From: Chlorokybus atmophyticus
Taxonomy: Eukaryota; Plantae; Mesostigma and Chlorokybus algae
Reading direction: 5' to 3'
Length of the DNA: 64,000 nucleotides
NCBI GenBank assembly: GCA_009103225.1
Contig: RHPI01003642.1
Location: forward strand, 156,451-220,450
This document shows positions 1,659-63,034 of the stretch, piece by piece. Below the pieces are notes generated by a model, which had not been told where the DNA came from, searched no databases, and saw nothing but the letters and a program-made list of their open reading frames with translations. Position 1 is the first letter of the stretch. Every line of letters begins with the position of its first letter. The position numbers and the translations under genes are program-made.

Positions 1659-3782
1659 CGCACAAGTACGGTAATGTTGTCGTGCATACGAATTCCTTCT
1701 ATAGCATTTGCATATCGAGTACGTCATTGCACAATAACCTAACAAACTTCCGCTAATAACACAACAATAATTCAGACGTACTGAAACCCCGCAATGTGAG
1801 CTTTTCCACAATTCTCCATAAGGAAAACATGTAGGGAGGGACACAGTGTCTCTCCCTACTTGTAGGGCAAAATGTTAACTACTACTTGGATCTTCGGCTT
1901 CAACTTCAATCCCATCCATCTATTGCAGGTTGGAGTGAGGGTCTCAGGTTTGTGCTGTATTCGTATGCAGCACCGTTGTAGCATGCTCTGCCAAGATGTT
2001 ACGAAAAAGTTGCTAAAGCAAGTCAGCAGATTGTCATGTTAGACGCACGTTTCAACTTCATGACAGCATCTCCACGTGCTGAATGAACTATTGTCCAGGC
2101 AACAATATTGATGAGCACCCATGTGCATGAGCTTCACGACCTCTGCACGCCATGCTGCCTGTGGTTATTACTTTCTTGTTCAATGTGCTGGCAGCTCCAT
2201 AATGCAGTATCAACATCATTGGGTGTCAGTGGCTAAGAGTTGATAAGGTATCATTGGCTAACAGCAGGTGTGTGTAACATGCATCTTACATAGTCGTGGG
2301 TAAGCATCCACTGCAGTATGGGTCAATAAGTGAGTGTTACTTGTTGGGATCTAGTAAGACGCGAGTCAACCCTATCGTGGACGTGAACGCTATCGTGGAA
2401 GTTGAATTGAACATGGAGGAGTAGAAGGGACCCGGGTTGTCGAACAGGTTGGCGTTGCACTGCAGCCACAGCATGCGGCGCCGCATCCGACGGCCCTGAT
2501 GGTCATGGGGCAGCTCAAGACCCCGCCAAGTTGGCAACGCCAAACCCCCAGACGCAGCGACGCTTGGAAGCGGTTGGTGGACGTGGACGCTAGAAAAGCT
2601 GGACAGCGGTCGTCGCCAATTGCCCGACGCTTGGCCACCTGCAGCTTACTAAGCCCCGCAGCTGACGGAGGGACCTGCGTGGCTGGCGCCAGGCGGGGGT
2701 CGACGTGGAGGGGCTAGGCAAAGGTTCCTGCGGGGCTGAACGCTTGCCAGCCTTGCCCCCCTCCGCCGCCCCTGCAGCGCTTTACGCCCCCGCCTAGGAC
2801 CCTGGATACCTCCTCCTGCGCACTGACTGTCCTACCCTCACCCGGCGGACGCCGCTCCCGCACCAACTCCTGCTCCCTACCTGCGCCTCTCGCTTCAGCA
2901 CCAGCAGCTTCAGCGCTTCCCGCTCCAGCAGAAGAATCGCCCTGCTCCTGCTGCCCTCATCGCTCCCTTACACCCTCTCCGGAACTACACCCCCTTCCCC
3001 CTCACCCCTCCATCCGCCATCAGACCGCCGCAGCCGCGCCATCACTCAAGGCCCGTAAATGGCTGGCGGCAGTGAATCATTAATTTATCCCAACCTGGTG
3101 CCCGAGGCCTTGGGCCACAGTTAGCCAAACCTCGTAAGCTCCTTTCCTACTGCCGCGCCCCGCCTAAAGCATATAATGCATAGGGTATGTGTCATCTTTC
3201 ATAATGCATGTGCACATATTTGTAAAGCCCCTGTAATAATATAGGTGTTGCTCTTGCCTGTCTTTGTGTCTAGTTTGCTTGCTGCTTGTGCTGTTGCTTG
3301 TGGTGTATTTGGATTGCTTCTTTCCCCTACGACTTATACCTTATGCACGGTGCTTAATGGCCACAATCATGTGACGCTATAAATGGTAGCCCACAGTCTG
3401 CGGAGGTCATTGTACAATGTTCTAACCATGAATGCGTCCGAAGGGTTCAAGCATTGCAAGCTTTTTCCAGTATGTTTACAAGACCAAAAGCCTATTCTAT
3501 GCATGCAACACGCTTACTTCACACATGTTGCTAAGGTGCTCCCAACGAGCGCAGCAGCATCGACACCAGACAGTGCGAAGACTCTCAAGTGCCGATTTAA
3601 AACTGCTATGCCTAAGCCAATGATGATTTATCACTTTATCACAGCAATATTTGCCACAAGCATGCGTGCGTCATTCATGTTAGAACAGTAACTTACAACA
3701 CATGGAACCTAAGAATATTGTCAGGGTCTATATAGACAATGATGAATGAGGAAGGCAACAGGGTCACACAAGACACACGAAG

Positions 3783-6700
3783 CTAGCATTGTATGTACAT
3801 AGACGGACTAAACGGCTCGTAGCCAGGCCGGACTTCAACCATAACAGCAGCGGCATCACCCTGCAGGCGCGAACGCACCGGACTCACAGCAAATCCAGGA
3901 CCAAATGCCTCCAAGCTGAACGATGGCTGCACACAAGAAGCGAGCAATCAGTTGTGTCTACAGCTCGGCATGCAATTCAACCAAGCAAAAGACCTGCGGG
4001 CGCTCAGTACCTGACGGAAGACGCTGGCAACTTTCTCAAGAGCCTCATTTCTGTAGCCACCAAAAGGATTGGAAGATGGTGTCTCCATGGTATATGACGT
4101 TAGGGCCTCGATCATTGCATCTTGACCAGCATCAGGCCCCCAGGTATGAAGCAGCTCTGCTGCTCCATGGTAGACATCGGAGTTTGCATCCAGGTGTCGC
4201 ATCATTGCAAACAGCGCATCCTCATCGGGATTGTGAGTGTCAGCTTGGCCTTCAGACTCTCCAAAAGCTGCCGACTCCAGAGCAGATGCCCGCACAGCCT
4301 CCGCTTCATCCCTAACAACCTTGGGTGGTGCTGTAAACTGGTCCGCCATTGCCTGCCCCTTGTGCTCCATCATAAGAAGGCCAGCAGCAGACGTGAGCAT
4401 GTTCTCCATCTGCGGGACAAGCTCCGCAGATGCACGCGCCAAGTCAGCATTACAATCACCTAATTTTGCACCGCTGTGGCCTTCCAGAGAAAGGCTGCCA
4501 TAAGTTGGCCTGTGCGGCGTTGTCTTGAATGCTGAAGGAAGCTGAGCCTCTTCAAAAATAATGCGTGCACGTGTAGCAATCGCAATTGCTGATTGCGGCG
4601 ACTCCTGTTGAGGTGATATCTCAAACTCAAAGCTGTTGAGGGACGAGATGTCAGACAATCGCCTTCGTTTCCGCACAATAGACGGAGTTGACCCGAAAGA
4701 TGCAGCAACTTCGCGCAGTTTCAATTGGGGTGTATCCAAACAGTCAAATGGCGACAGAGCACTGCAAGGAGCACAATCAATGCTGTCAAGGCCATGTTCA
4801 ATAAAAGATTGCAAGGCAGCGATGCCGCCGCCGGCGCAAATGCGACTTACATGGTCTGCCTCAACCCAAGCGGACTGAATTGCCCATGCCGAACAATTGG
4901 TGTGCCGGTGCCAGTTGCCTGCCTGAACTCTGTTTGTAACACCTGCGACAAGGAAGCCTTGAAGAAAACCACACAGCTGCCAATGCCAGCATGGCGGAGG
5001 AACCCAACAAACCTTGAGCGCGTGACTCGGGTCGAGTGGTACACGAGGAGGCTCATAGCACAAGGCACCCTCCAACTCTTCAGCAGGAGCATCAATGCGG
5101 CCTGCACAAGGTGCCAGTTGTTAGGCCACAGCACAAGTGAAGCGTACTGTCAAAGTGTTAAAATATACCGCTGGGAGACGCCTCCCAGGTCGCAACGTGC
5201 GTAGCAAAGGTGCTGCCGTTCCCTTTGACACCAAACATAGCGCAAGCAGCAGCCTCAGGCCGCTGGGGTCCAAGGGCTGAGCCAACAGCATCTTCCAGCC
5301 TTCCAGTCATTGTCCAAGCCTTGCTGGGTGAACATGTACCTGGTGCACCTAGAGCTGCAGTGTTCGCGTAAGCACCGCAGACAGGTTGGCAGACTTGGAT
5401 AGGAGCTGGTGCGAACTGCTGGAGTCGAGGCGACATATGCGATTTCTGAAGTGGGCTTATCGGCGAGGTCGGCTGTAGAATGGCAGGTTTGTACCCGACA
5501 TGATGCCCTTGCGGACTCGAGGGAACTGGCAACATATTCATGATTAGGTTGAAGCAGCAACAGTAGCATCATCGCTAGGCAAGTATGCAGGCTGTTGTTG
5601 CAGCACTTACCTTGTCGTTTGGCGGGTGACATTGGAGGTAGTGATCCGTTGGTGTGCATACGAGGTGGCATAGGTCCGGCTGCGTTGCTAACAGTAGCTC
5701 CGGCAAATTGGCTGTGGATCCGCCGATCAGATTCACGCTTGGCAATCTCCTCTTGCTGCAGCTGTTCTTCAAGCTTGCGCTTCATTGTGCTGTTCCAGTG
5801 ATTCTTGATGGAGTTGTCAGTCCGACCAGGCAAAACCTTGGCGATCTCCGCCCATTTGTTGCCAAATTGTCGATGCGCCTCCAGCAACGCCCGGTCCTCT
5901 TCCTCAGTCCAAGCATCACGTCGTATGTCCGGGTTCAGGTGGTTGTGCCATCTGCACAGACGCTGTCAGCAGGTGCAAACACTAGGATGATACTGTGCAA
6001 ATCCAGCAACGTATATTCAGCAACATGCCAGTGTGTATGTGGGCAGCTGTATCCAACCATTAGTTCAGACATCATGGGAAGAACATGATTGCTTTACAGC
6101 GCGACTGATGCATCACTGATTTGTGCATCAGAGAACCAGAGGTTACCTCTCCCTGCATTGCTTGCCAATACGCCCAGGTAGTTTTTGAGCAATTTGTGAC
6201 CATTTCTTAGCACCATACTCCTTGACAAGACGCACAATCTTTTCATCTTCCTGGCAAAGCAGCGCAATAACATATCAGACGCAGAGCTTGGAAAAGTGCA
6301 AGTGGTGAAGACAAAGCTAGCTGCATACCAAACATGCTCCTGATTTCTGATACGAAACAAGCCAGATACTCTGCGGATCAAACCAACCTCTTTTGTCCAA
6401 GGGCCTTTTACGAGCTCGGGGTTCAACACCTTCTGCCACCTGTGCAAGCACTGTACATCTGTGCGGTCCGTGAAAAACTCCGCTGCAGCCACAACGATTG
6501 CATCAGCAGCTGCTTCAAAGGCATTCCAGCACAGAACAACCGCCAACCACGATTACCTATCTTCTTCCAGTTTTTGCCTTGATACAGCTGTACAGCTCTA
6601 CGCAGAGTTTCATCCTGCATATTGCGTTGCATAAGATACTACGATACCACATTTGAGCAGCATGCAATCATGCCTCATCCTACACCAGCAATGAATGCAT

Positions 6701-7148
6701 GAGCAAGCTTGCAGCAGTGTACATACTTCCTCTTTCGTCCAGCCGCCCTTTGATGATCTGCGCGTTGGGCCACCCGTTCGCCTGCAGCAGTCACAAGCAG
6801 TACCAAACAGTGAGAATTGAGCTTAACAACTGGTTAGCCAACATGGCGACAACGGCCGAACTGCGCAGATACTGCATCCCGCTGAGGTTTGGATGGCTTA
6901 CACCACGCAATGGCTGCAAAGCCCTTACAAAGACAGTACACAGCCCACAATACGCACCCTTTTACCGGAGGCAGCGCCTCTGCACCCGATACTGGGACTA
7001 AGCCTGTCGCCGGACGTGCAAGCAACGAGGCGGGCCCACTATCTGCAGCAGCACCGCTGGCTCCAGCATCGCTGCTGCCGCCCTCATCACTGCTAGAAGA
7101 CGTGCTCGGCCGGCCCTCTCCTCCTGCTTCCCTGCCTCCCAACACCAT
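3783..7148 (-). CDS. MYB3R: R1R2R3-MYB (3R-MYB) cell-cycle transcription factor, multi-exon
   Basis: Spliced exons give three MYB repeats: [79 protein letters not shown]...[31 protein letters not shown]...[29 protein letters not shown]. Also the MYB3R-type motif [16 protein letters not shown] and C-terminal FSPSMYIQC*. Start codon approximate. Confidence 0.95.
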
Positions 7149-7234
7149 TTTGCCCTTCCTCGACCACCCGCAGCAAGTTCACCGCCGCCGCCACCGGCAC
7201 CACCACCACCAGGTTGAACTAGCAGCTGCTAGCC

Positions 7235-7932
7235 AACGGCCTTCATGCCCCGCGGCTCCAGCGCCGCCTGGCTGCCAGCGCCATCATCAGGATCTCTGCA
7301 GCGAACCCAGCGCAGCTATATCCCGCATGTAGCACCGATGACACCACCTCCCTCCACCACAATGACACCGCCGGCGCCACGTCCGCCTACGCCACCTCCG
7401 CCCCTGCCCGCCGCCGCCCAGTAACCGCAAGCTGAATACGTAGCACTCAAAAACCAAAAATCCCACAGCTGTCCCCAACCCTACCCCCAGCCCGGGCAAA
7501 CCACAGCCCAAATGGGCCTCAAAGCCTGCTTTGCATGAAAAAACGGAACACTAGCGCCTTAACGGCCGAAAAAATTTGAAATGCGGCCGACAAATCGCAT
7601 TTCATGAAAAGAATCGACCCCTTAACCGGGATCTCTGGCCATCTGCTACGCCGATCCGACGGTATACCAAACCCATACTCAAGTCTACTCAACGGCTTCG
7701 ATGACCGTAAGTTGCGTTCAGCCCTTCGATCCCGGTTAGCGCTGCGGCCGTTGAGAGCTCAACCTCTCCGTGCTCAGTTATGTGAGCCGAGCCAGCAGTA
7801 CGTGTCGTGGGGTACGGTGCCGACCAAGCAGGCTGATTGGACAGGGTGACGGGGGACAGGATGTGCGGCAGATGCGATGGCGACGTCGGCCAAACTTTGA
7901 ACTCTGTTTGACGTCAGTGCTTTCTGTAACGG
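7235..7932. promoter_or_regulatory. Cluster of MSA-like (AACGG) and CHR-like (TTTGAA) motifs at the 5' end/upstream of MYB3R
   Basis: AACGG at 7235, 7542, 7561, 7691, 7928 and CCGTT at 7748; TTTGAA at 7575 and 7896. Function inferred. Confidence 0.5.
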
Positions 7933-50789: not shown

Positions 50790-52781
50790 TCACCGCGCAC
50801 GGGTGTTATGGTCGCTACTGATGAAAGGCAAGTCTCCTAGTGGCGGCAGATTCAAGTATCGGGGCAGTGACTCAACCTCAAGAGCTACATCGCTTCCCAA
50901 GTCCTCACCCGTGCTCGTCCTCTTGTTCTTGACCACGAACCCTGTGACGCGCTCGCGACGCGGGGCTCGAGGAAAGGCATAATGTATAGTGTACAGCTGA
51001 TGTTCCAATAAGAACTGGTTCCACAAGATGGTCCAGTGTTGCTGTGGCTGATTTACATAACCGGCCGCATCCAACCAGCCGTGAAAGCTCTGCCATGCTG
51101 TGGGCAGTGCAAGCATTGCCCATTCACATGCTCGTGGCGACCTGTAGATGGGCTGTGACTTGTAGTCTTCATGCCACACTGACATTTGCAGCAACAGACA
51201 TGTCAGCAGAGATACTAGTCATGCGCTTGGGATATAGGATGACTGACGACGTATTGTGCTGCACATTAGAGTGGAAGCAGCCTGTTACCTGGGTGCAGGC
51301 ATAGGGATGCAGCGCTTGGGTCAGTCTCACGTACGTAGTACTCCATCACCATGTTGCGCAAGAACTGGTACATTAGAGGGCTGCGCTGGTGGATGGCAGG
51401 CAATGTCTTAGGTGATGACTCGCAAAGTATCACAAGGTGCTTGCAAGCTTACAAAATGTGTGCGCCAAGACTCTGTTCATGGTCATGCTGACAGCAACTA
51501 CCTGTCGATGCAGCCTTCACTGCCTGTACCTGACTTCAGTGTCTTCTTCAAGAATCAAGCCCACATTCCTGAGAGAAACAGGCTCAAACGCTTCTAGCCA
51601 TGCAGTGGTCCAGCCTGCAGGCCTCGCACGCCAGATGACTCGCTGATTACCGTGGGGCCAGTTCGTGCTCGTGGCAATGTCTCTGCACCTGTGCTGCAGA
51701 AGTGTTTGCGAGCAGAAGAGGTGTATAACACTCGATATGTGTTTTGCACAACACTGTGGTTGTTGCGCATGTGCGCTGTACAAGCACTGTGTCTCCTACG
51801 CACACCTTCTGTTGTGAGCTGCATCCCCGCAACGGTCACAGAACACATCCAGGTTGACCCAATCGCCAGTGTAGTTGACGCGAGCAAGAGAGTTCAGAAG
51901 CCTTTGCAGCCCATCCAGATGACGGCACGCAAGCACCTTCGCACCAAAAACTGCAAGTAAGTGCATGCACAGTTGCTGACAGCAGTATGTACTGGGGCAA
52001 GCCGAAGGTCCTACAACAATCCAAAGTCCACAGCACCCTTCGAACGTATGGTGCAACTTGCAGTGAAACATGCCTTCTGCAAACACCCTCTGCACTAATC
52101 TGTTAACTTGACCAAGTGCTATGGTCCAGTCAGCAATTTGCTGAAAGTTTCGCGTCCTGGCAAGCGCAGTGACACACCTCAGCTATCCAAGGTAAATGGC
52201 AATCAGACTGCTGCCAGTTAGGCTTAATTGAGATTTGACAGTGGTTCAAAGCCGTTGACTATGCAAAAGTCAACCACCAAAGCCGTGTCACTGAGTGTCG
52301 CGTTCAAACGCTCCTCCATGCACTGTAGTTCTTGCAGCGCCTTGGCTGCTCGAGGACCAATGCAGAAACTTGCTTGTCCACAATGCGGAAGGAAGAACTC
52401 AATCAGCAGAGGTGCGATCGACCTCACCTTGATGTCAAGGATGAAGGATTCCTGCACATCCTGCGTGAGGTGTGGCGCTAGCACGGGCAGCTGCTGCTCA
52501 CGGAGTTGGTGGCTGCGTCGGGCAATGCCAGTGGCGGTGCTGAGGAAGTTTAACTGCCCCTCCTGGTCGTCAACCCCAGCGCCGGCGTGGCCCCCACCCA
52601 CGACGCCCCTCGAGAACGCCACGGCGGCGGACAGGACGCCGATAAGCAGCAGCAGCATCCACAACCAGCGCCGCTGCTGCAGCGCTCGCCGCCTCTTGCT
52701 CGCCCCTGGCGTCACCGGCGCCTGCGCCCCTGGCGCCTGCGCCCCTCCTCCTCTCCTAGCCGACGGCGGCGGCGACCACAT
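50790..52781 (-). CDS. Type II membrane (Golgi-type) putative glycosyltransferase, multi-exon
   Basis: N-terminal TM WLWMLLLLIGVLSAAVAF; RHLDGLQRLLNSLARVNYTGDWVNLDVFCD; WPHGNQRVIWR..PAG...WLEAF...LILEEDTEV (DxD-like). Resembles a plant glycosyl-transferring family. Confidence 0.7.
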
Positions 52782-52981
52782 GTTCGTCTCCCCCGCGCCT
52801 CCTGCTCCTCACCCAACCGCCATGAGCACCCTCTCCGCCGCCACCACCACCGCCGTCACCTTCGCCTCACCCATCCTCGTCGTCGCCGTCCACCTCATTG
52901 TCGTTGTCAACGTCGTCGTTAGCACCTCTGAGGCTGTTATCGCCGGTAGCAGTGTGCTCCACTAGGGTTTTGGAGCGCACC

Positions 52982-54883
52982 ATGGCGGGGGGCACAGGCA
53001 AAGGTGGGCATGCGGGGTTGTCGGAGGCCAAGCGGCGGCGCCTGGAGGCGCTGAGTTCCGTCTACGGCGGTGGGGGCAAGCAGCCTTCATCAGCTGGGAG
53101 AGACACTCCTCCTACAACTCCTATTCATCCTACTCCTGCTGCTCATGTCGCTATTGCTGCTGCTGTTGAGGGGGCATCTGTCTCAGGGCGGCCGCCTGCA
53201 AGCTTGACTCAAGGACGCAGTCCTTCCACAAAAGGTAGTTGTCAAGCAAGCACAGCTGTCCAGCACAACACATGCTGAGTGCCGCACCCGCATTGCTTTA
53301 TCCTCACTGACTGTCATAGTCTGTGACCAGTGTTGCATGCATGCGCGGCATGAAGCCATGCATTGCGTAATGTAACTCACAGGCACTCAGCTGCAAGACA
53401 GAGGTCAGCGTGTTGTTCCCCCATTGGTGCAAACCCGCCCAAACCAGCCGCCAAGACAGCAGACATTACAGCAACACAGACAAGCACAGGTGCCTCCGCC
53501 TTCGCACTGCACGCCGATAGCAAGGCTGCTGCCACCTGGTGCGGTTGTCGACAAGCTTCAGGTGGTCAAGTGAAATGCTGCGTTGCAATTATTCATCGCC
53601 ATTGGTTTGTCCAGTTCTCGGTGTGTGATATGAGACACGTGCTTGCGTGTATGCTGTCCATGTTGTGTGCAAACAATAGTCGCATATATGTATGAGACTG
53701 TATGTGGTTACTCAGGCGTTGAGGTCGAAGAGCGGTCCGGACGGCGAGTATGTTGATGCTTTGGTCACGGAGTTGCTGTCGACAAACCCAAAGGTAAGCG
53801 ACCCTGCCACTGACCCTGCCACTGCCACTGTGCTGCTTGCACCCACATAACTCACACCGCATCTTGTCACGCAGTGGTTGGATGCCACCTTTGTGCTTGA
53901 CTCCAAGGTGCGAGACAAAGTGGTGCTGCTTGACAATCCCACAGCGCAGGTGACTACTTTCAAATTCTTACACAATACCATATGTCACTTTGGCTAGTAT
54001 GTAAGAGGTTGTAACACGCAAAGAGGGTGCTTGCATGTACGCAGTTCTCCCTAGAAGGATCCCGTGTAAAGGAGAGGGCCCGCACCGTTGCTGCAGCGCG
54101 CAAGCGAGCAGCGAGCTCTGCGGCTATGAAGGCCATGCGCCTGCATGACATGCCTGCTGAGCTCTGCAGGTATGCTTTACTTACATAGCGCAGCTGGTGC
54201 TGTTGGTTCTTAATGCAGTAACTGTGCCCCAGGCATGAGATTTATCAACCGCTGCAAGCGATTTGGGAGGAGTATGCGCAAGACTTGCTGCAGGGCTGCA
54301 GGTGTGGACCAGTTACACATACCCAACAATCGCACAATCATGTGGCTTTTTGACAGCTGCCATAAACCTTTACCTTGTTGTCTGACTGCAGTGATGAGTC
54401 AGCTTTGCTGTCGCGCTTGATGGTTATGGACCGGCATGGTGCTGTGCTAAGACGTGAGTGTACAAAGAGCCCAGACTAGGTCACTGGTAACGCGCATCGT
54501 GATGTGGTTACGTGCACTTATACGTGTACTGTTGCCTGCCACAGTTACACATGCACGCCAGCCAACTTACGTGGGACTTGAGGGGATAGTTGTGATGGAA
54601 ACGGCGTGTACGTTCCGGTTGGTAACCAAGCACAACAAATTGCAAGGTATGATGCACTTGAGCACAACAACCTGCTCGTTGCTCACTTCAGAGGCCACGT
54701 ATGTTCTCACACATGCTCTTTATGGCAATTGCAGTGGTGCCCAAGCAGGGAGCGGTGTTTGAGATGCAGGTGGGTCTGCGCACCGTCGTCTTGTACGGGA
54801 AGCAGCTGTTGCAAGCTCCAAGAGGCGCAGCAAAGCGCTCCAGAGCCAACACCGCATCGATGTTGCCGACCATTGAGTTGTAG
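52982..54883 (+). CDS. POP4: RNase P/MRP subunit p29 (Pop4/Rpp29), multi-exon
   Basis: KVRDKVVLLDNP; IYQPLQAIWEEYAQDLL; DRHGAVL; PTYVGLEGIVVMETACTFRLVTKHNKLQ|VPKQGAVFEMQV...VVLYGKQL. Confidence 0.88.
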
Positions 54884-56144
54884 GCCGCGCATGAGGCTGC
54901 AGCCACAGGGATATTCATCAATAACGCTTGGTTGCAACAGGTGACTACTACTCACATACAACTAGCCAACACCAACTCAGCCTGTGATGCTTGTCTGCAT
55001 CTCCGCCATGACAGAATTGGAGGACCCCACACTCTCGCTCTTTGCCTGCTTGTAAGTTGCGAGAGATTGATATTGCGGCCAGCAGAAGATCCAAGAACTA
55101 CCTGTGTGGCAGTACCCGCGCAACCGTGTGACTCGGCTACTTCAGGTACGCAAGCCGACTTTCAATGTTTTGTTTTTCTCTCGAACTTATCAAACTAAGC
55201 CACCCAGACAACCTCCTCTAGCATGCAAACCTTCACCAGCTGTCTCTGAAGCCCTTGATGTGGAGCTTCAGTTCAGGCCAATGAGGAACGCAGCCAAATC
55301 AAGCCCTGCCCAATATGACTGTAGCTATCCTCAACACCCTCCGTAACGGTGGCTGTCGCAGCATCTGCTCCCCCTCCAGCATGTGTATGCTTTGGCGCAA
55401 GCAAGCCTCAATGACAGACTGCTACAAGTGAAGGGGGCATGCTGTCATCGCCTCCTGCAGCCCCCAGGCTGCCCAGTGGCGCTCTGCCCGATCTGCGTTT
55501 TGAAGCACTGCGTGCAGTACCCCAGCTGCCTACAGTAGCACGTGCCTACAGTAGCACCCGGCAATGACATATGCGCAAGCGCAATGTAACGATGTGAAGC
55601 CGCTATTTGTAGCAAGAAACGCATTGCTTCATCACAACGCATTCATGTCCATTGAGGGTAAAACTGCGCCTGTATGCTGGCATGACTGACAGGGTTGGAC
55701 CGCTTTGGCAGTTGTTGCTACTCTGATACACGATGATGCTGTATAGTGGTATTGATCTTGAGTTGGCATGGAGAGTGGTGGTGTGTATGTGATGTACGCA
55801 TAGCCCACAAAGTGACGCGCTTCCGTGTAGCACACTTCATACATAACAGTGAAGTTGTAAAGCCACGACTCTGGTTTGTGATACGATTATGGAAGTCTGA
55901 GGTCATGTGCAAGACTGCGAGCAGGCATGAACTCATGCCACTGCCGTGGGTCACTTGGCTGCTGCTAGCAGTGCAAGCGCCAGCACTGCAGGACAGTCAT
56001 GTTGGCAGTGACAAGTTCAGCAGATCCAAATGCAAGGGCACAACACGAACACTAGAGATGGTGTCTGAGTATTGAATGAAGTCAACGGAGAACATGTTGA
56101 CCAAGAAAGAAAGAAACACCAAGAGAGGGACTCTTGTGCACTGG

Positions 56145-59100
56145 CTACCTCCCGTTGCCGTTTGCTGCATGTTTGACATGCCCATTGACAAGCCCGTTGG
56201 CTTTGCTTTTCTTGACCACTTCTGTGAGAACTTCAACTGCCCCGTTGGCAGCTGGTTTCCCAAGCGCTTCTTCAAGCCCGGAGCTAAACAGCGCTGCATG
56301 GTGTCGAGCTTCAATGGTTGCCTTGCGATGATGCTCTTGGACCTTATGCTTGATGACGTCTTCAAACAACTGCGCTGTCAAGTTTGGATGCTCTTGAGAA
56401 AACACTGCGGCTTGCAGAGCAGCCATCAACTTGGCCAGCTCTCTCCCTGAGAAGCCTTCAGTCTGCTTGGCTGCTTGATCAACCAGAGCTGAGTTCATGC
56501 TGTCTGCACCTATGGCTGTTGGTTTTCGCTTTGTCAGCAGGCCACCAGCTTTGATGGACAGATACTGAGTGTAATACAGCTCTAGCAGTTGCCGTCGCTG
56601 CGGAAGCGCCGGAAGGTCAAACTCCAACCACTCGTCTACTCGATCCGCCACCGCTGCGTCCAAGTCGCCCGGGCGATTGGATGCAAGCACGAGCAGAAAG
56701 GAGCTCGTCTGGCAACCAGTTCTGTACAACACTGCATTCAGTGCTGAACGCAGCTGCTCGCCCATGGCTGCTCCCACCTGTATATCACATGGATGAGACC
56801 ACAGACAATAGCCAACGCACATTTGAATTTTGCAAACAAACACAGTACCACACCTCGCTTGCATCACGTCGCCTCAGAAACGCATCTGCTTCATCGATGA
56901 ATAACAATAAGCCTCGTCGGCTGCAAAGTAGTTTAAGGTCAGTCATGACATGAGTACTGAGCTCCAGCAGTGCAGACGCTAATGTGCACACATGGTGTAG
57001 ACGAGACTTCAAGGTCGCTGACCTTCTAGCAGCCCAGTCAAAGAGTTTATGTAGTTCTGTGACCGCATGTCGTCCCAAGGGGCCGACATCACCGCCACTC
57101 ATGATGGCATAGTCCATTCCACACGAGCGAGCAAGCCTCTCTGCTGCCATTGTTTTCCCTGGATACACAGAAAACAATCTCAGTTCCCTGAAGCAGTTCT
57201 TGGACACGAGTCCTTTCAGCTAGTAAGCAGCCATTGAGCAGATGCAGTGTCAAGCTGTTTTGTGTCAAATGGCATACCAGTTCCTGGTGGGCCATAGAAC
57301 AGCATGTGTCGGAACGGCATGTGATGGTGTCGCTGATTGGCGATTGATGATGCAGCTTGCTGCAAGCGCTTGTACAGGTTGTCCGCAAGTACAATGTCGT
57401 CAAACATTTTGCTTGAATCCTGGCGCACGCGCCACATAGAAAAGATACCAGCTGACGTTTCACGCACAAGCCGTGGCTTGCCAATCAGGCTCTGCAACGA
57501 CCACAGCAATTTTAAGTGTGATCCGAACCAGGTGTCAACAATGAGATCGGATCAGCCTTGCAATCCGCATGAGCTGAGTCCCTGCAGCAAGCCTCATGCT
57601 CACCTGCAGCAGCTTGGTTGCGAATTGCGCCATAGCTTTGGACATGAAGTACGCCAATACGCACGCAGACACTGCCCCGGCCAGCAGCATCAGTCGCCGC
57701 GGATCAAGCAGCAACCCATGGATGCCTTGACCCATGCGGCTGAGTGCAGCTTCAACCATCTGCTGACGAGCATGCCCCTGCGCAGCAATCTGACGCAGAG
57801 TGACATCTTCGTTCTCGCGGGCCTCCCTGCAGTGCAAGCAACAATCTCAGCTTCCAGCTCACAAGCGTTGGTACTGCTAACAGCTGATGATGCTTGATGA
57901 AGTTGCTTGTGTATTGTTCTCACCTGATGCGCCCGTCTGCTTCAGTCAGCGCGCGTTCTCGTGCCGTAGCCTTGTCCAGCTCGGCTCGTTCTTTATCGGC
58001 ATCCAGCTGCAGCCGCAGCAAGCGTGCTTCAGTCTCATGCCTGCGCCCCTCTTGGCGTAATGTTACTGCCTCCTGTAGCTTCACCAACTCCACCTGCCAG
58101 AGTACCGGTAACTGTGTTAGCAGGACTCCTTCATAACGGTCGCTCCCTCTGCAACAGATAAGTCTCCGACCACAACATCTGGCACGAAATACAACGTAGA
58201 CCAAGGCAAGGTCATGCTCTTGAGCACTACCTGCTGAGCCACGGCCAGGTCTGCTTCTGCTCGGGCTCGCTCCAGGCTGAGCTGGTACTCGTACTGCGCC
58301 AGCTGCCATTGACAACCCAGCTCTGCGGCGCAGGATCCACCATGGTGCACAACCGACAAGCTGTTGGACTTGACATTCTGGTTGCCAGTGATATCAGTAA
58401 CAGACCCAGCAGGAACAACTACTGTGACTGCTCCTACACCAGATGGCTGGATTGTGGCTGCATAGTGGGTGTCATTCGACTTGCCAAAGGTGGAGATGCT
58501 CCCACCAGCGCTACCAAGCAACACCTGTGCAGTGCACTGGTTGTTTGATTCGGTACAATGTACACAGTGCATGCATTGAGTAGTTGCAGCAAGGGCAGGT
58601 ACCTTGGACGCCGTGAAGTCGTCTACCGCTTCACTCCACGAAAAGGTTACATTGAAAGGGCCGTCCTGCTCCGCATCAGGGCCGTTGACCACGCATTCTG
58701 GAGGAACCTCATCGCGATAGATTCCCACAGCCACAGGCGACTCGAAACCCCGGATGGTGTTGATATGCTCTCTTTGCTTGTTGAAGACGACTATGCTACC
58801 AGCCTTATCAGCCACATAGATATTGCCCCTGGTATCCACCTCAACACCCGTTGGCTCCACGAGCAATCCCGCTCCGAACTCCCCTACTGCGTGTCCTGTC
58901 TCATTGAACTCGCGCACTACCTTGCCAGAAGCATCCACAGCAAACAGCCTGCCCTCAGCACTCACTTCAACTGCAACAGGGCGGAAGTCTGCGTGGCTTA
59001 CAAAAGACTGCTTGTAATTCATATTTGCATCAAATTGTAGCACTCGCGCATTGGGGCTGTCAGCGATGTACACCTGGTTCTTGCCATCCACCTCAATGCC

Positions 59101-61846
59101 CATGGGAGCTCGCAGCTCGTACGAACCATTGCCACCACTGCCGGAGCCAATCGTAGCGACCTTGCGGAAACCAGCATCATAGACAACCACCTGGTTGGCA
59201 CCAGCATCGCATATGTACATGCGCCCGGTGCTGTCTACATCCATGCCGGTGACTTGGATGAACCCGGCAACTGTGTTCACGAGCGTGTGGCTGCCATCAT
59301 AGACGCGAACCTGGCCTCTCGCATTGTCAGCGACGAATACCCTTCCCACAGAGTCCGATTCCACAGTCGACGGCTGTTGGCAGTCGCGAATGTTGCCCAC
59401 AACCTTGCCATTGCTATTCACCACTGCAACACCCCCTCTTTCTGCCACATACAGGTTCCCACTCGCAACCCGGACGGTCAGCTTGTGCGACTGCTGAGTG
59501 TTGACGTTGCCAGCGACATCAGAGGCACTGCCGGGTGCAACCAAGACAATGCTGTTGCCAACGCCATGAGGTGTGACTGTGGCAATGAACTCCAAACCTC
59601 CCGGCAACTGCGTAAAGTTCGAAATGGCGGCTGGCACGCCCTCGAGCATAACGCCCGTTGCTGAAAATCCATGCACTGGCTCATCCCACACAAGGTGTAT
59701 CTCCCAAGGCGCGTCTTGTACTGTAGTAGGCCCACTTATGGTGCACACTGGTGGCTCATTGTCGTAAGTAACCATCACTTCATTGGACGCGGCTGTGTTG
59801 GTGCTGCCAGCAGTGTCTTTCAGCTTCCCAGCAGGCACATGCACAAATAGAACTCCTGGTGCGTTGGGTGCAATAGTGAATGTAAACTGCGAAGAAGATT
59901 GAGACTGCCACTGCGTCACCACGCCACCAACCCCACCCAGCACGAGGCAGTCTGCGGTGCAACCAATGACCGGCTCACTGCAGCTGGCAATTATGCGCGC
60001 TGAAGCACTTACAACATCTCCACTCAGTAGGCTAAGGTGGCAAGTTGGAGGCAAGTCTACTTCCCACTCCCATGCTTCCGAGTCTGCAACGCAGAGAGCA
60101 GCAAGTGAGTAGCCAAGAGAGCAAGTGGCTCAGTGTGCATCACCAAAGCCACACACTTACCCGCACTGTTGCCGGCTGCATCAGTAGCCCTCACACGCAT
60201 GCTGTGCGGACCTTCTGCAAGGCAATGATTAATGGAATGAGTGTCTGCAGCGCGCGTCAGCGCAAGCAACGCAAAGCCTGATGAGCGTACCTGCCAGCCC
60301 AACGTAGACCATAGGGGACGCACACGGCATGAAGTCTCCACCGTCAAGTTGACAGCTCATTGAGGCGACTCCGGAGGCTGCATCTTCACCAGCAAACACA
60401 AACCTTGCTACATCGGCATCTGATCGTGTCCAGGTGTCTTTGTCAAGACGTGTCACCGGGGCTGTTCTATCAACCAACCATGTCACGGTGGTGGGTTCCT
60501 CTGCTACGTTCCCAGCCCTGTCAACAGCTTTCAGCAGGAAGCTGTAATGCCCTTCACCAAGTCCTGGATATACAGCAGGTCAAGTTATGAGAGATGAACA
60601 TGAACAGACTCCACAGCACATGTCGGCGTCTGAGCCTCTAGCTGACCAGTTGCACTCACCCGTGAAGAGGGCGGGACTGGTGCACGAGTGATAAGCTTGA
60701 GCGTGCCAACTCAGCTCCGACTCAAGTGCACACTGGAAGGATGCAATGCCAGTTTCTTCATCTTCCCCAGAGAACACTACTCTAGCTACTGATGCATTCG
60801 TTGCTGTTGGAGGATGGCTGTGAATAACGGCCAACGGCGGCGTCTTATCTAATAAGTAAAAGTACTCCAATGAGGGCCTGAGTGCTTCTATAGGATGGTC
60901 AGAGGTGGCAAGATACGCCCGCGACCAGCACTGCAAGACAAATGCATTTTGTGAATTGACCCAGCTGCTGCGCACAACAAGCAATGGGTACACTGTGAGG
61001 AAGCCACTCAAACAAACAAGCTTGAAACAAACCTGTCTGTCGTTACCCAGCAGCAGGAAACCTTGATTGGTCGCTGGCTCTTGTAGCCAACTCTTCAACG
61101 CTTGCGAAATATCTACACTATGCTGTGCCCATGACCCTCGCGCCTGCATTGCAGCTGGTAAGCACCACAGCACCATGGTATGCATTGCAACGACTGGTTT
61201 ATAATCAACATGCCTGCGGGGTCAGGTCTAGCCTGCCAATGGGAACGCTGGCATATCGCGGCTTGGTGCTGTGCGCCAAATCCCGCTCGTACCATGCGTC
61301 CAGCACCGGATACACCGAGATGCTTGTTTGAGCAGCTTCATACCTGTACACAGTCGCTCAGCTGGTGCATGCACGGCGGGTGCATGCAGATGTACGCCAA
61401 CACAGTGCAAATGAACAAGTTTGCTGTGCATTACTGAGCAGCGCCTACTTTGACAAGTCTTTCGCTGCTGTACACCGCATGCAGCAGACGTGCACGTAGC
61501 ATACGCTTGCATGTGAGCTCACTCACCGGCGAACGTGCAGCTGAAGCAGAGCGCTTGACAGCTGGACGCCCTGCAGTTCCGCAACACTAAACCGGACGAA
61601 AGCAAAGTACTCGCCTCCAGGCTTCCCATCTTCCGGACACCTTCTGCCGACATACATCAATGGATCGCTCCCGTTGACGTTGTCGGTGAAAGAGGCGTCA
61701 GTGAAGCTGTCCTGCCCTTGGCCAGGCCCAGGCTTAAGCGTTCCCTGCTGCTCAACCCAAGCAGCATGGACACCAGTGATAGCTACACTGACCAAGCAGC
61801 ACAGCAATGCCACCGAATAGACTAACTGCTGGCTGGTGGCCATCAT
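56145..61846 (-). CDS. Fusion gene: signal peptide + DNRLRE-like domain + bacterial Ig-like repeats + NHL propeller + Ig-like + ATAD3-like coiled coil/TM/AAA+ ATPase
   Basis: All exons join in frame by GT(GC)-AG introns. AAA part: [22 protein letters not shown]|KT (Walker A), [26 protein letters not shown] (Walker B), [39 protein letters not shown]. The ATAD3-type coiled coil [15 protein letters not shown] begins inside the same exon as the last Ig-like domain. Confidence 0.85.
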
Positions 61847-62073
61847 GAGCAATAAAGCTAACTTCACACAACCGAGCGTCCAGTTATGATCAGGAAATTA
61901 GATGCAACTCCGCTAATTCTGCTGTAGTTTCGGTTGTGGTTTGCGAGCGGACAGCTTGTCCTGATGTTTCCTCCTCCACCGCCTGGTTAGCGGCGCTAAG
62001 CTCAGCCACTTGTGCACCCACATGTTGATCGCCAGTGCCGCGTACATTGCAACTTACACGGTAGCAGTAACAC

Positions 62074-62096: not shown

Positions 62097-63034
62097 CGCA
62101 GCGCAATGTCACCAATGTCATACAGCTGTTCATAACAGCGTGCAAATGCGATAATCAGCTGCGCTTCGCCAAGCACACCGCTGCGCTGCACAGTGCAACA
62201 CAGTCCCCAAAACGCACGCCAAGCACAACGCCGACACAAGGCGGTTACGAGCGACCAACTGTCGGTGCAGTGGCTTTGAATCGGACGACCAGCTGCGTTT
62301 GACCGCGTCGCCAAAGCGATGCCTGTCGTGAGATGCTACAGAACCGTCATAACGGTCGACGGTGGTGGCACTGTCGGCGCATGAGCACCGTGCATGTGAG
62401 CAGCTGCATTGCTGGGCTGGGTTGGGCGGTGGCGGTGGCGGTGGCGGGAGCGGCGGAGGCGGAGGCGGAGGAGGAGGTTAGCTGTCAGCGTTGGTGGAGT
62501 TGGATTCGGTGGAGCTGCTTTTGAAGGATGCTACTTGCGTAAGCAAGCTGCTGGTGGCACGGCCAGGACGGTGCTTGCGGCAGGCCCAGGAAGCCGAGCA
62601 GGCTGTTGTGTTTGCGTGCATGTTGTTGGGAGCGGCGGTGCTAGCTGCAGGCGCGTTCTCTTCCGTCATTGGGTGCATGCTGGCCCAGCCTGGCGTTCAA
62701 GCGAGTGGTTGCAGCGTTGTAGGTGTATAGTCGTGTGCGTCCACAATGTCATCGGCGGCAGTTACGCCCGGAGCGCCGTCCGCGATGGGTCCGGAAGGAC
62801 AGGACTGCGCTGCGCGTTGAAAGCCACTGTGTGTCCCTCAGCCTATCGTTCTTAAAACCGACCATCGCGGTAAGTCCCTTCCCTGTAGCTTCTCTAAGCC
62901 TGGGGATTGCAACTGCTTTCATGCCGTGCTTGTGAAGCCCTGACTACTGCATTACACTGCATCCCAGCCAGTGTACTCACGGCTGCGCGACATGCAATTG
63001 ATCTATCTCACAATGGTGCTCACAGTTGCGGCTG

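What the first reader, a model, noticed from the sequence alone, without database searches (positions are those of the whole stretch)
56145..61846. Receptor-like AAA+ ATPase: bacterial-type Ig/NHL/DNRLRE ectodomain fused to an ATAD3 coiled-coil-TM-ATPase
Seen: one in-frame spliced reading frame runs from a cleavable-looking signal peptide ([28 protein letters not shown]). It continues through a DNRLRE-like domain ([13 protein letters not shown]...FAFVRFSV...SALLQLHV; [10 protein letters not shown]; [11 protein letters not shown]...NQGFLL) and two Ig-like repeats of the DxTPP...FSGED...FQCALE...CTSP...DRAGN type. Next come two SEPV.G...FTFTI.P...VPAG...D.AGN repeats, about six NHL repeats (e.g. 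[32 protein letters not shown]) and another Ig-like repeat. Without any stop or required intron it then enters [25 protein letters not shown]|[10 protein letters not shown]...[30 protein letters not shown], a TM ([17 protein letters not shown]) and an AAA domain with intact Walker A and B. Established: ATAD3 proteins are mitochondrial membrane AAA+ ATPases with this coiled-coil/TM/AAA order and no secretory ectodomain, while DNRLRE, these Ig-like repeats and NHL arrays are typical of bacterial surface proteins. Inference: an ATAD3 paralog retargeted to the secretory pathway as a type I membrane protein, with a lumenal/extracellular adhesin- or glycan-binding ectodomain coupled to a cytosolic hexameric ATPase. 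I know of no described protein with this architecture.
Basis: partly seen in the sequence, partly recalled or inferred. Interest (0 to 1): 0.88.

Follow-up and report, generated by a model that had tools for sequence, protein, structure and literature searches.

The report
Surface-type ATAD3 ATPase of green algae
This is a real, expressed gene of the alga Chlorokybus in which a mitochondrial-type ATAD3 motor ATPase carries a secretion signal and a roughly 920-residue bacterial-style sugar-binding/adhesin outer domain; the same undescribed design is conserved across deep green-algal lineages.

Summary
A spliced RNA contig covers the gene with 13 introns and gives one 1458-aa reading frame, window 61846-56145 on the minus strand. 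Domain order:
- signal peptide
- DNRLRE/CBM96 jelly roll
- two OmpL47-type barrels
- two Big_12 Ig domains
- six-bladed NHL propeller
- one more Big_12
- conserved Cys-x5-Cys
- second half of the ATAD3_N coiled coil
- one transmembrane helix
- intact AAA domain

One exon (58524-58231) encodes both the last Ig domain and the start of the coiled coil.

The genome is Chlorokybus atmophyticus, and its public annotation already holds this model. Chlorokybus also has an ordinary 597-aa ATAD3, so this gene is an extra paralog.

Proteins with the same layout and the same ATAD3_N breakpoint (profile position 101/102) occur in Chloropicon, Pycnococcus/Pseudoscourfieldia, a pedinophyte and Prasinoderma. 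In Chloropicon the gene is one uninterrupted ORF. These proteins form a single clade (support 100/99), separate from canonical plant ATAD3.

The signal peptide and four invariant or near-invariant ectodomain cysteine pairs are conserved, and most members obey the positive-inside rule. This fits a type I secretory or cell-surface protein with a cytosolic AAA ring, but localisation is inferred, not shown.

I found no paper describing this family, and the scan's earlier notes did not mention it.

The parts
56145..61846 (-). Complete coding region of the surface-type ATAD3 paralog. It has 14 exons and encodes 1458 aa, stop included. CDS exon segments: 61846-61527, 61343-61214, 61143-61033, 60930-60660, 60563-60291, 60214-60161, 60083-58603, 58524-58231, 58093-57924, 57826-57604, 57491-57278, 57158-57023, 56920-56854, 56777-56145.
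   Evidence: Spliced RNA contig with 13 joints. Splice-site check. Spliced translation. Matches public model P0001 apart from 5 aa.
61763..61846 (-). Signal-peptide-like N-terminus, aa 1-28. It has an uncharged n-region, a 16-19 residue hydrophobic core and V-H-A before the predicted cut. The mature end begins A-W-V.
   Evidence: Kyte-Doolittle peak of 2.38. Equivalent hydrophobic N-termini occur in P0154, P0155, P0156, P0160, P0199, P0200, P0202 and P0217, each followed by a conserved Trp. The AlphaFold model starts its first strand directly after the cut.
60865..61711 (-). DNRLRE / CBM96-like jelly-roll domain, about aa 46-209, spread over exons 1-4. It holds the conserved pair Cys70 / Cys188 (Cys193 in P0001 numbering).
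   Evidence: NCBIfam DNRLRE_dom 58.4 bits, cutoff 34, profile 2-162 of 164. Pfam CBM96 in orthologs P0158 and P0154. Foldseek hit to the chondroitin-sulfate-binding CBM 8wab_B, TM 0.67. Cysteine conservation.
60043..60819 (-). Two OmpL47-type / Big_13-like beta-barrel Ig-like domains, about aa 225-400. Each carries an invariant cysteine pair: 254/270 and 348/358 in my numbering, 259/275 and 353/363 in P0001 numbering.
   Evidence: NCBIfam barrel_OmpL47, 2 stretches, 66.5 bits, cutoff 40. Pfam Big_13. Cysteines invariant in 11 of 11 family members.
59458..60045 (-). Two Big_12 bacterial Ig-like domains, about aa 400-595.
   Evidence: Pfam Big_12 68-72 bits. AlphaFold model ma5890b9a055a shows beta-sandwiches at pLDDT around 90.
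58720..59481 (-). Six-bladed NHL beta-propeller, about aa 588-841.
   Evidence: Pfam NHL 47-50 bits, cutoff 20. About 24 strands in the model. Foldseek hits: TRIM2 NHL 7b2r (TM 0.72, rmsd 3.2), six-bladed Pizza6 designs (TM up to 0.83), Lin41 filamin-NHL.
58354..58668 (-). Third Big_12 Ig-like domain, about aa 859-937. It is interrupted by the in-frame 78-nt intron 58525-58602.
   Evidence: Pfam Big_12 on P0001 864-942 and on exon 8 alone. Intron joint in the RNA contig.
58231..58524 (-). Fusion exon (aa 881-978). A single exon encodes the end of the last Ig-like domain, the invariant G-G-x-C-x5-C-x-W-Q-L-A-x-Y motif (Cys945/Cys951, about 58312-58332) and the first 25 residues of the ATAD3 coiled coil.
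   Evidence: Sequence and translation. The RNA contig piece 58229-58522 is joined to both neighbouring exons. The junction motif is conserved in all 11 aligned family members.
57462..58305 (-). C-terminal half of the ATAD3_N domain, about aa 954-1119. It comprises the second coiled coil, the transmembrane segment and the conserved G-K-P-x-L-V-R-E-T-S linker. The first ~100 positions of the Pfam profile are absent.
   Evidence: Pfam ATAD3_N 77.6 bits, profile 102-265 of 265. The start is at position 101/102 in 11 of the 12 clade members scanned, and later (144) in P0169. Canonical copies cover profile positions 12-22 to 265.
57643..57693 (-). Single transmembrane helix, aa 1080-1096.
   Evidence: Hydropathy peak of 1.72. 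A hydrophobic segment aligns here in all family members. The N-side flank is net negative and the C-side flank net positive in 10 of 11 members.
56616..57305 (-). AAA ATPase core, about aa 1172-1302. Walker A, Walker B (F-I-D-E-A-D), sensor-1 Asn and the conserved N-R-P...D-R arginine region are all present. The lid domain and C-terminal tail follow, down to 56148.
   Evidence: Pfam AAA 77.2 bits. Motif alignment with 37 canonical and paralog ATAD3 sequences. 44% identity to the canonical Chlorokybus ATAD3.
61144..61213 (-). GC-AG intron (70 nt) used in the RNA contig. The public model uses a shorter GT-AG alternative, which adds 5 residues.
   Evidence: Joint 61141/61212 with 6 ambiguous letters. 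Only a shift of +2 gives a known splice-site pair. P0001 carries 5 extra residues at this point.

Best explanation
The locus is one expressed gene of Chlorokybus atmophyticus. It encodes a 1458-aa member of a conserved green-algal clade of ATAD3 paralogs.

In this clade the N-terminal third of ATAD3 is replaced. The lost part is about the first 100 positions of ATAD3_N, which is the region that in animals reaches the outer mitochondrial membrane and cytosol. In its place are a cleavable signal peptide and a disulfide-bonded ectodomain of roughly 920 residues built from prokaryote-type surface modules. These are a DNRLRE/CBM96 jelly roll, two OmpL47-type barrels, two Big_12 domains, a six-bladed NHL propeller and a further Big_12.

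Shown here: the gene, the fusion, its conservation, the separate canonical copy and the intact ATPase motifs.

Inferred steps:
1. The signal peptide takes the protein into the ER.
2. The ATAD3 transmembrane helix acts as a stop-transfer anchor, giving a type I orientation with the N-terminus outside and the C-terminus in the cytosol. This is the same orientation relative to the membrane as in canonical ATAD3.
3. The AAA domains form a ring on the cytosolic face. The retained ~110-residue coiled coil forms a membrane-proximal stalk on the lumenal or extracellular side, and the invariant Cys-x5-Cys staples it at its top.
4. The stalk presents several copies of a glycan- or matrix-binding head.

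The most likely role is ATP-dependent coupling between the cytosol and the cell wall, mucilage or another extracellular or lumenal polymer, for example in assembly, anchoring, adhesion or sensing. This would be analogous to the way canonical ATAD3 bridges the inner membrane to the outer membrane.
For: Gene and fusion:
- A spliced RNA contig with 13 joints spans all the exons and gives a 1458-aa ORF.
- One exon carries both halves.
- The Chloropicon primus ortholog is a single uninterrupted ORF.

Family:
- The same domain order occurs in P0148, P0152, P0154-P0158, P0160, P0199, P0200, P0202 and P0225.
- The ATAD3_N breakpoint is at profile position 101/102 in 11 of the 12 clade members scanned, Chlorokybus included. 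These 11 include the two longer variants P0183 and P0217, whose N-terminal regions differ; the third variant, P0169, matches only from position 144.
- Named members are Chloropicon primus and C. roscoffensis, Pycnococcus, Pseudoscourfieldia, Pedinophyceae sp. YPF-701 and Prasinoderma.
- The clade has support 100/99. It is separate from the canonical Viridiplantae clade, also 100/99, which contains the canonical Chlorokybus copy P0449.
- The canonical copy exists in the same genome.

Topology:
- There are exactly two strongly hydrophobic segments, the N-terminal signal and the transmembrane helix.
- The signal-like N-terminus is conserved and is followed at once by the first strand of the folded domain.
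- Four cysteine pairs are conserved in the ectodomain (three invariant, one near-invariant), against one partly conserved cysteine in the ATPase half.
- The transmembrane flanks follow the positive-inside rule in 10 of 11 members.
- The closest non-family relatives of the NHL-Big_12 module are giant prokaryote-type surface proteins. P0005 is 4129 aa and sits in a compact PhoU/ABC neighbourhood.
- Foldseek retrieves receptor and adhesin ectodomains: Eph, RPTP, SiiE, Sevenless, LRP6.

ATPase: all catalytic motifs are conserved.
Against: - No signal-peptide, transmembrane or targeting predictor could be run, and there are no localisation data. Type I secretory topology therefore rests on heuristics and conservation.
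- N-glycosylation sequons are not enriched in the ectodomain: 51 observed against 50.8 expected across 11 members.
- In the Chlorokybus protein itself both transmembrane flanks are net +2, so the positive-inside rule does not decide the orientation there.
- The linker after the transmembrane helix is retained. In canonical ATAD3 it lies next to the inner-membrane anchor and could still carry mitochondrial targeting information.
- Hexamer formation and coiled-coil oligomerisation are carried over from canonical ATAD3 and were not modelled.
- The RNA evidence is an assembled contig, not single long reads.
- The proposed function has no direct support.
Confidence: 0.72

Rival explanations
1. The protein is still mitochondrial, like canonical ATAD3. 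The transmembrane helix sits in the inner membrane and the AAA domain in the matrix. The large N-terminal region lies in the intermembrane space or reaches the outer membrane and cytosol. The N-terminal hydrophobic segment would then be an outer-membrane anchor rather than an ER signal.
For: - The ATPase half keeps the ATAD3 coiled coil, transmembrane helix and post-helix linker, with 44% identity to the canonical copy.
- Human ATAD3A is described as spanning from the matrix to the outer membrane and cytosol (PMC13249166).
- The intermembrane space is also oxidising, so conserved disulfides do not exclude it.
Against: - A canonical ATAD3 is present in the same genome, so the mitochondrial job is covered.
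- The N-terminus has the shape of a cleaved signal: a hydrophobic core, small residues at -3 and -1, and a folded domain starting straight after it. This is conserved in the orthologs.
- All the ectodomain modules are families of prokaryotic surface proteins.
- A ~920-residue multi-disulfide beta-rich region is unlike known intermembrane-space proteins (established knowledge, not tested here).
Confidence: 0.12
2. It is a type I protein of an internal compartment (ER, Golgi, vacuole, or scale- or wall-forming vesicles) rather than the cell surface. The lumenal CBM/NHL head binds glycan cargo and the cytosolic AAA ring acts on coat, cytoskeleton or membrane.
For: It shares the topology evidence of the main reading. 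Nothing in the sequence tells the plasma membrane apart from endomembranes. The cytosolic tail (about aa 1400-1458) is poorly conserved, so no shared sorting motif is evident.
Against: The nearest module relatives are extracellular adhesin-like proteins, and the fold matches are cell-surface receptors. Neither point excludes a lumenal site.
Confidence: 0.14
3. The fusion is an artefact. Two neighbouring genes, a secreted Ig/NHL protein and a truncated ATAD3, have been merged by read-through, by contig assembly or by gene prediction.
For: The RNA evidence is an assembled contig, which by itself does not prove a single molecule (the tool's own caveat).
Against: - No stop codon separates the halves, and both lie in one exon.
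- The junction motif is among the best-conserved stretches outside the AAA core, across 11 proteins from three green phyla.
- In 11 of the 12 clade members scanned ATAD3_N starts at profile position 101/102.
- Chloropicon has one uninterrupted 4.5-kb ORF.
- An ATAD3 lacking its first 100 positions would have no start of its own.
Confidence: 0.02

Closest known systems
Canonical ATAD3 (human ATAD3A/B, Arabidopsis ATAD3 proteins, Chlorokybus P0449)
   Same: It shares the second coiled coil, the single transmembrane helix, the G-K-P-x-L-V-R-E-T-S linker and the AAA domain with all catalytic motifs. It is 44% identical to the canonical copy of the same genome and 43-46% identical to plant and algal ATAD3. 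The orientation relative to the membrane is the same: coiled coil on the outer side, ATPase on the inner side.
   Different: - It lacks the first ~100 ATAD3_N profile positions.
- It carries a signal peptide and a ~920-residue ectodomain.
- It forms its own clade, separate from canonical Viridiplantae ATAD3.
- Its predicted site is the secretory pathway, not mitochondria (inference).
Giant prokaryote-type surface proteins with alternating NHL and Big_12 modules (e.g. P0005, 4129 aa), DNRLRE-domain proteins and Leptospira OmpL47
   Same: The same module families are present, at about 30% identity over the NHL-Big_12 region.
   Different: Those proteins are long repeat arrays with no ATPase, no coiled coil and no eukaryotic signal or anchor. 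Here each module type occurs in a fixed order that is conserved across the family.
FtsH and mitochondrial m-AAA/i-AAA proteases
   Same: They are membrane-anchored AAA rings with a domain on the far side of the membrane. FtsH is among the sequence matches of the AAA core.
   Different: They have a protease domain, two transmembrane helices in FtsH, and a small periplasmic domain. They have no coiled-coil stalk and no adhesin-type ectodomain.
Animal type I receptors with jelly-roll/Ig/FN3 or beta-propeller ectodomains (Eph, RPTP mu/kappa, Sevenless/ROS1, LRP6)
   Same: The overall ectodomain layout is found by Foldseek: an N-terminal jelly roll followed by beta-sandwich domains, and a propeller flanked by beta-sandwiches. 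Both have a single-pass type I design.
   Different: There is no sequence relationship (7-14% identity). The cytosolic enzyme here is an AAA+ ATPase rather than a kinase or phosphatase.

Membership tests
ATAD3 family (AAA+ ATPase) | ATAD3_N domain (PF12037) above the Pfam gathering score | tested here: met
   77.6 bits against a cutoff of 25, but only profile positions 102-265 of 265. Canonical copies cover positions 12-22 to 265.
ATAD3 family (AAA+ ATPase) | Complete N-terminal region (first coiled coil and proline-rich part, profile positions 1-100) | tested here: not met
   It is absent here. In 11 of the 12 clade members scanned the match starts at position 101/102, and in P0169 later, at 144. 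The signal peptide and ectodomain take its place.
ATAD3 family (AAA+ ATPase) | Hydrophobic transmembrane segment between the coiled coil and the AAA domain | tested here: met
   Hydropathy peak at aa 1080-1096, aligned in all members.
ATAD3 family (AAA+ ATPase) | AAA domain with Walker A, Walker B, sensor 1 and the arginine region, closest to ATAD3 among AAA proteins | tested here: met
   Motifs are intact. It scores 359 bits against the canonical Chlorokybus ATAD3, against about 100 bits for the best solved AAA proteins, Cdc48/p97 and NSF.
ATAD3 family (AAA+ ATPase) | Falls inside the canonical ATAD3 clade of its lineage | tested here: not met
   It belongs to a separate clade (100/99), and the canonical Viridiplantae clade (100/99) holds P0449 instead. 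The branching order among the paralog clade, the canonical green clade and other eukaryotes is unresolved. No non-ATAD3 outgroup was included.
ATAD3 family (AAA+ ATPase) | Mitochondrial inner-membrane localisation | not testable with these tools
   The signal-peptide-like N-terminus argues against it, but no predictor or experiment was available.
DNRLRE / CBM96 domain | Match above the NCBIfam cutoff and a jelly-roll fold | tested here: met
   NF033679 scores 58.4 bits against 34, over nearly the full profile. The model has pLDDT around 80-90. Foldseek finds CBM 8wab_B with TM 0.67. Glycan binding itself was not tested.
OmpL47-type beta-barrel / bacterial Ig-like domains | Matches above the curated cutoffs | tested here: met
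   barrel_OmpL47 66.5 bits against 40, two stretches. Big_12 72.2 bits against 27 and Big_13 32.6 bits against 27.
NHL-repeat six-bladed propeller | NHL repeats above the cutoff, folding into a six-bladed propeller | tested here: met
   NHL 47-50 bits against 20. About 24 strands at pLDDT around 90. TRIM2 NHL TM 0.72 at rmsd 3.2, and Pizza6 TM 0.83.
Type I single-pass membrane protein of the secretory pathway | Cleavable N-terminal signal peptide | tested here: inconclusive
   The hydrophobic core, small residues at -3 and -1, and conservation in orthologs all fit. SignalP or an equivalent was not available.
Type I single-pass membrane protein of the secretory pathway | One further transmembrane helix with the positive side C-terminal | tested here: met
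   There is a single internal hydrophobic segment. The C-side flank is more positive in 10 of 11 members, and the two flanks are equal in Chlorokybus.

The most novel reading that the evidence does not exclude
These proteins could be cell-surface AAA+ machines. A cytosolic ATPase ring would use ATP to move or re-set an extracellular coiled-coil stalk that holds several glycan-binding heads. That would be an energy-driven link from inside the cell to the wall or matrix, a kind of transmembrane enzyme with no described counterpart. It would already have been present in the common ancestor of green plants and later lost in land plants.
Probability: 0.3. Interest if true: 0.9.

Novelty: new variant of a known kind. 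Interest (0 to 1): 0.72.

Why it matters
ATAD3 is known only as an essential mitochondrial membrane ATPase, and its mechanism is still unclear. This work finds a sister family, conserved in all three green phyla (Prasinodermophyta, Chlorophyta, Streptophyta), in which the same coiled-coil, membrane-anchor and AAA core is joined to a signal peptide and a large adhesin-like ectodomain.

If the predicted topology holds, it would be the first AAA+ ATPase built like a cell-surface receptor. It would also show that the ATAD3 core is a portable module for linking an ATPase ring across a membrane to an outside structure. That gives a second, possibly more accessible system for asking what the ATAD3 ring does to its stalk. 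It also offers a candidate player in wall or matrix biology of early-diverging green algae. Several members are abundant in marine metagenomes; one cluster at 90% identity has 96 member sequences.

Tried and rejected
- Exon-by-exon Pfam scans were too weak to identify the N-terminal domains. Full-length P0001 and NCBIfam resolved them.
- The PDB sequence search found no solved ATAD3 structure, only generic AAA proteins.
- N-glycosylation sequon density gave no signal, with 51 observed against 50.8 expected in the ectodomains. I dropped it as evidence.
- Literature searches for ATAD3 together with algae, signal peptide, Viridiplantae, prasinophyte genera, DUF3523/PF12037 and receptor-like AAA+ found nothing relevant. 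One apparent hit, PMC10735309, uses "ATAD3" where the tRNA deaminase ADAT3 is evidently meant.
- The scan's own notes had nothing on ATAD3 or a related gene in this genome.
- P0269, the best canonical hit, was considered as a possible Chlorokybus copy. I rejected it because it lies on compact intronless metagenome contigs. The real canonical copy, P0449, turned up. Its contig is not in the look-up collection.
- I considered independent fusions in different algae and rejected the idea. The breakpoint and junction motif are shared and the clade is monophyletic.

Full report
**1. What is in the sequence**

The feature lies on the minus strand. One 645-aa ORF (58117-60054) runs from Ig-like and NHL sequence straight into Q-L-A-Q-Y-E-Y-Q-L, the ATAD3 coiled coil.

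Four runs of one organism were found that hold this DNA as RNA. Laying them on 56000-61990 gave one 4515-nt contig of run X1 that covers the gene with 13 joints. Twelve introns are GT-AG on the minus strand. The thirteenth (61144-61213) fits only as GC-AG. Splicing at these joints yields a 1458-aa ORF from the ATG at 61846 to the stop at 56145-56147, with an in-frame stop upstream in the same exon.

- The coiled-coil intron is 58094-58230.
- One intron is GC-AG.

Exon 58524-58231 encodes the end of the last Ig-like domain and also the first 25 residues of the coiled coil. The two halves are therefore joined within an exon, not by a splice model.

**2. Identity of the genome and of the protein**

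An exhaustive search with the largest exon returned P0001 (1463 aa). This is the same protein apart from 5 residues at the GC-AG intron. Its source name is jgi/Chlat1/5091, so the genome is Chlorokybus atmophyticus, an early-diverging streptophyte alga.

Domain scans on P0001 give:
- DNRLRE_dom, 58.4 bits (cutoff 34), residues 46-214
- two OmpL47-type barrels, 66.5 bits (cutoff 40)
- Big_13, and Big_12 on both sides of the propeller
- NHL repeats
- ATAD3_N, 77.6 bits, covering only profile positions 102-265
- AAA, 77.2 bits

AlphaFold models built on family alignments are confident, with pLDDT 82.6 for residues 29-405 and 87.9 for residues 398-962. Foldseek shows a CBM96-like jelly roll followed by beta-sandwiches. 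The overall layout recalls Eph, RPTP and SiiE ectodomains. The middle part is a six-bladed NHL propeller flanked by Ig-like domains: TRIM2 NHL has TM 0.72 at rmsd 3.2 and Pizza6 has TM 0.83.

Hydropathy finds two strongly hydrophobic segments, the N-terminus (aa 8-26) and aa 1080-1096. Walker A, Walker B, sensor 1 and the arginine region are all intact.

**3. It is a family, not a one-off**

I searched with the ATPase half while allowing long proteins. This found the same architecture in Chloropicon primus (P0156, 1514 aa), Pedinophyceae sp. YPF-701 (P0200, 1618 aa) and about ten metagenome clusters. Cluster look-ups add Chloropicon roscoffensis, Pycnococcus provasolii, Pseudoscourfieldia marina and Prasinoderma coloniale. 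All three green phyla are therefore represented.

Evidence for a single origin:
- In 11 of the 12 clade members scanned the ATAD3_N match begins at profile position 101 or 102. These 11 include the two longer variants P0183 and P0217. The third variant, P0169, matches only from position 144.
- The whole ectodomain is collinear across the family, with mean column identity of 36-43%.
- The junction motif G-G-x-C-x5-C-x-W-Q-L-A-x-Y is conserved in all 11 aligned proteins.
- The Chloropicon gene is one uninterrupted ORF (L005 3001-7545 within ORF 2482-7545). This proves the fusion independently of any splicing.

**4. Paralog or replacement**

A search with a canonical algal ATAD3 returned P0449 (jgi/Chlat1/1605, 597 aa). 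It has a near-complete ATAD3_N (profile 15-265, 267.7 bits) plus AAA, and is 44% identical to the ATPase half of the fusion.

Maximum-likelihood trees (LG+C20, 38 and 43 sequences) put all the fusion-type proteins in one clade with support 100/99, with Chlorokybus sister to the rest. Canonical Viridiplantae ATAD3 forms another clade, also 100/99, and P0449 sits at the base of its streptophyte branch. The branching order among these two clades and other eukaryotes is unresolved, and no non-ATAD3 outgroup was used. The duplication is therefore at least as old as the green lineage, but it cannot be dated more precisely.

**5. Where the protein goes (inference)**

Complete orthologs all start with a signal-like hydrophobic segment. 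It ends in small residues and is followed at once by a conserved Trp, which begins the first strand of the folded domain.

Four cysteine pairs are invariant or nearly so in the ectodomain: 70/193, 259/275, 353/363 and 950/956 in P0001 numbering. The ATPase half has only one partly conserved cysteine. This indicates an oxidising compartment.

The transmembrane flanks are net negative on the N side and net positive on the C side in 10 of 11 members. The ectodomain modules belong to families of prokaryotic surface proteins. The nearest non-family relatives of the NHL-Big_12 part are giant repeat proteins such as P0005, on a compact 3.2-Mb contig next to PhoU and ABC genes.

Together this favours ER entry, a type I orientation and a cytosolic AAA domain. 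That is the same orientation relative to the membrane as canonical ATAD3, whose ATPase faces the matrix and whose N-terminal part reaches outward (PMC13249166).

Weak points:
- No targeting predictor and no experiment were available.
- Sequon density is uninformative.
- The linker after the transmembrane helix is retained.

**6. How it probably works**

By homology with ATAD3, the AAA domains should form a ring and the retained ~110-residue coiled coil should oligomerise. In this paralog the coiled coil would stand on the outer side of the membrane, with the invariant Cys-x5-Cys at its top. That position suits a disulfide staple within or between chains, as seen in other extracellular coiled-coil proteins (my own knowledge, not tested).

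The stalk would display several copies of a head made of a CBM-like jelly roll, five beta-sandwich domains and a propeller. I therefore read it as an ATP-dependent link between the cytosol and an extracellular or lumenal polymer such as wall, mucilage or scales. Which membrane it sits in, what it binds and what the ATPase does are all unknown.

**7. Rivals**

- A mitochondrial location is possible but disfavoured, because a canonical copy is present and the N-terminus looks like a cleaved signal.
- An internal secretory compartment cannot be told apart from the cell surface with the data here.
- An artefactual fusion is effectively excluded.

**8. Novelty**

The gene model and its orthologs are already in public databases under generic names ("AAA domain-containing ATPase", "ATAD3A/B"). 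Seven full-text searches found no description of the architecture, and the scan's earlier notes do not mention it. It is best classed as a new variant of a known kind: an ATAD3-family ATPase with a new N-terminal half and, probably, a new cellular address.

Noticed in passing
window 61144-61213 (minus strand): The RNA contig uses a GC-AG intron of 70 nt. The public JGI model (P0001) instead uses a 55-nt GT-AG choice, which adds 5 residues (S-A-M-Q-A). This is either alternative splicing or a small annotation error.
   Followed up: partly
window 58525-58602 (minus strand): A 78-nt intron stays in frame and has no stop, so the genomic ORF reads straight through it. Intron retention would insert 26 residues into the last Ig-like domain.
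   Followed up: partly
P0217 (2039 aa), P0183 (1050 aa), P0169 (1091 aa), from metagenomes: These three proteins fall inside the paralog clade, but their N-terminal regions are different or unrecognised. P0217 is longer and has a signal-like start. P0183 has an N-terminal anchor-like segment and no Pfam match in its first 490 residues. Both keep the breakpoint at position 102, whereas P0169 matches ATAD3_N only from position 144. The outer part of the family seems to be exchangeable.
   Followed up: partly
Hits: P0162-P0166 and many others of about 850 aa (MMETSP; Perkinsus, Amoebophrya); P0153 (Thraustotheca); P0234 (Symbiodinium); P0226 (Steinernema): Other unusual ATAD3 architectures turned up. 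Alveolate ATAD3s carry a PF13884 match between ATAD3_N and AAA. An oomycete protein has a PF13640 oxygenase domain in front. A Symbiodinium protein has JmjC and ankyrin domains in front. A nematode model is fused to a topoisomerase, which may be a merged gene model.
   Followed up: no
L006 2001-14390 (P0005) and P0002-P0150: Thousands of giant proteins (2,000-7,700 aa) are built from alternating NHL and Big_12 modules. The one inspected lies on a compact prokaryote-like contig. They are the nearest relatives of the algal ectodomain and a possible source of it.
   Followed up: partly
L001 3001-4749 (P0269): The canonical ATAD3 most similar to the Chlorokybus paralog comes from compact, intronless marine metagenome contigs of an unidentified green alga. 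In the tree it sits near the base of the streptophyte branch of canonical ATAD3.
   Followed up: no
window 52500-53000 and 62300-62900: These are G+C-rich stretches (0.59-0.69, against about 0.52 around them) next to the neighbouring genes. They were not examined.
   Followed up: no
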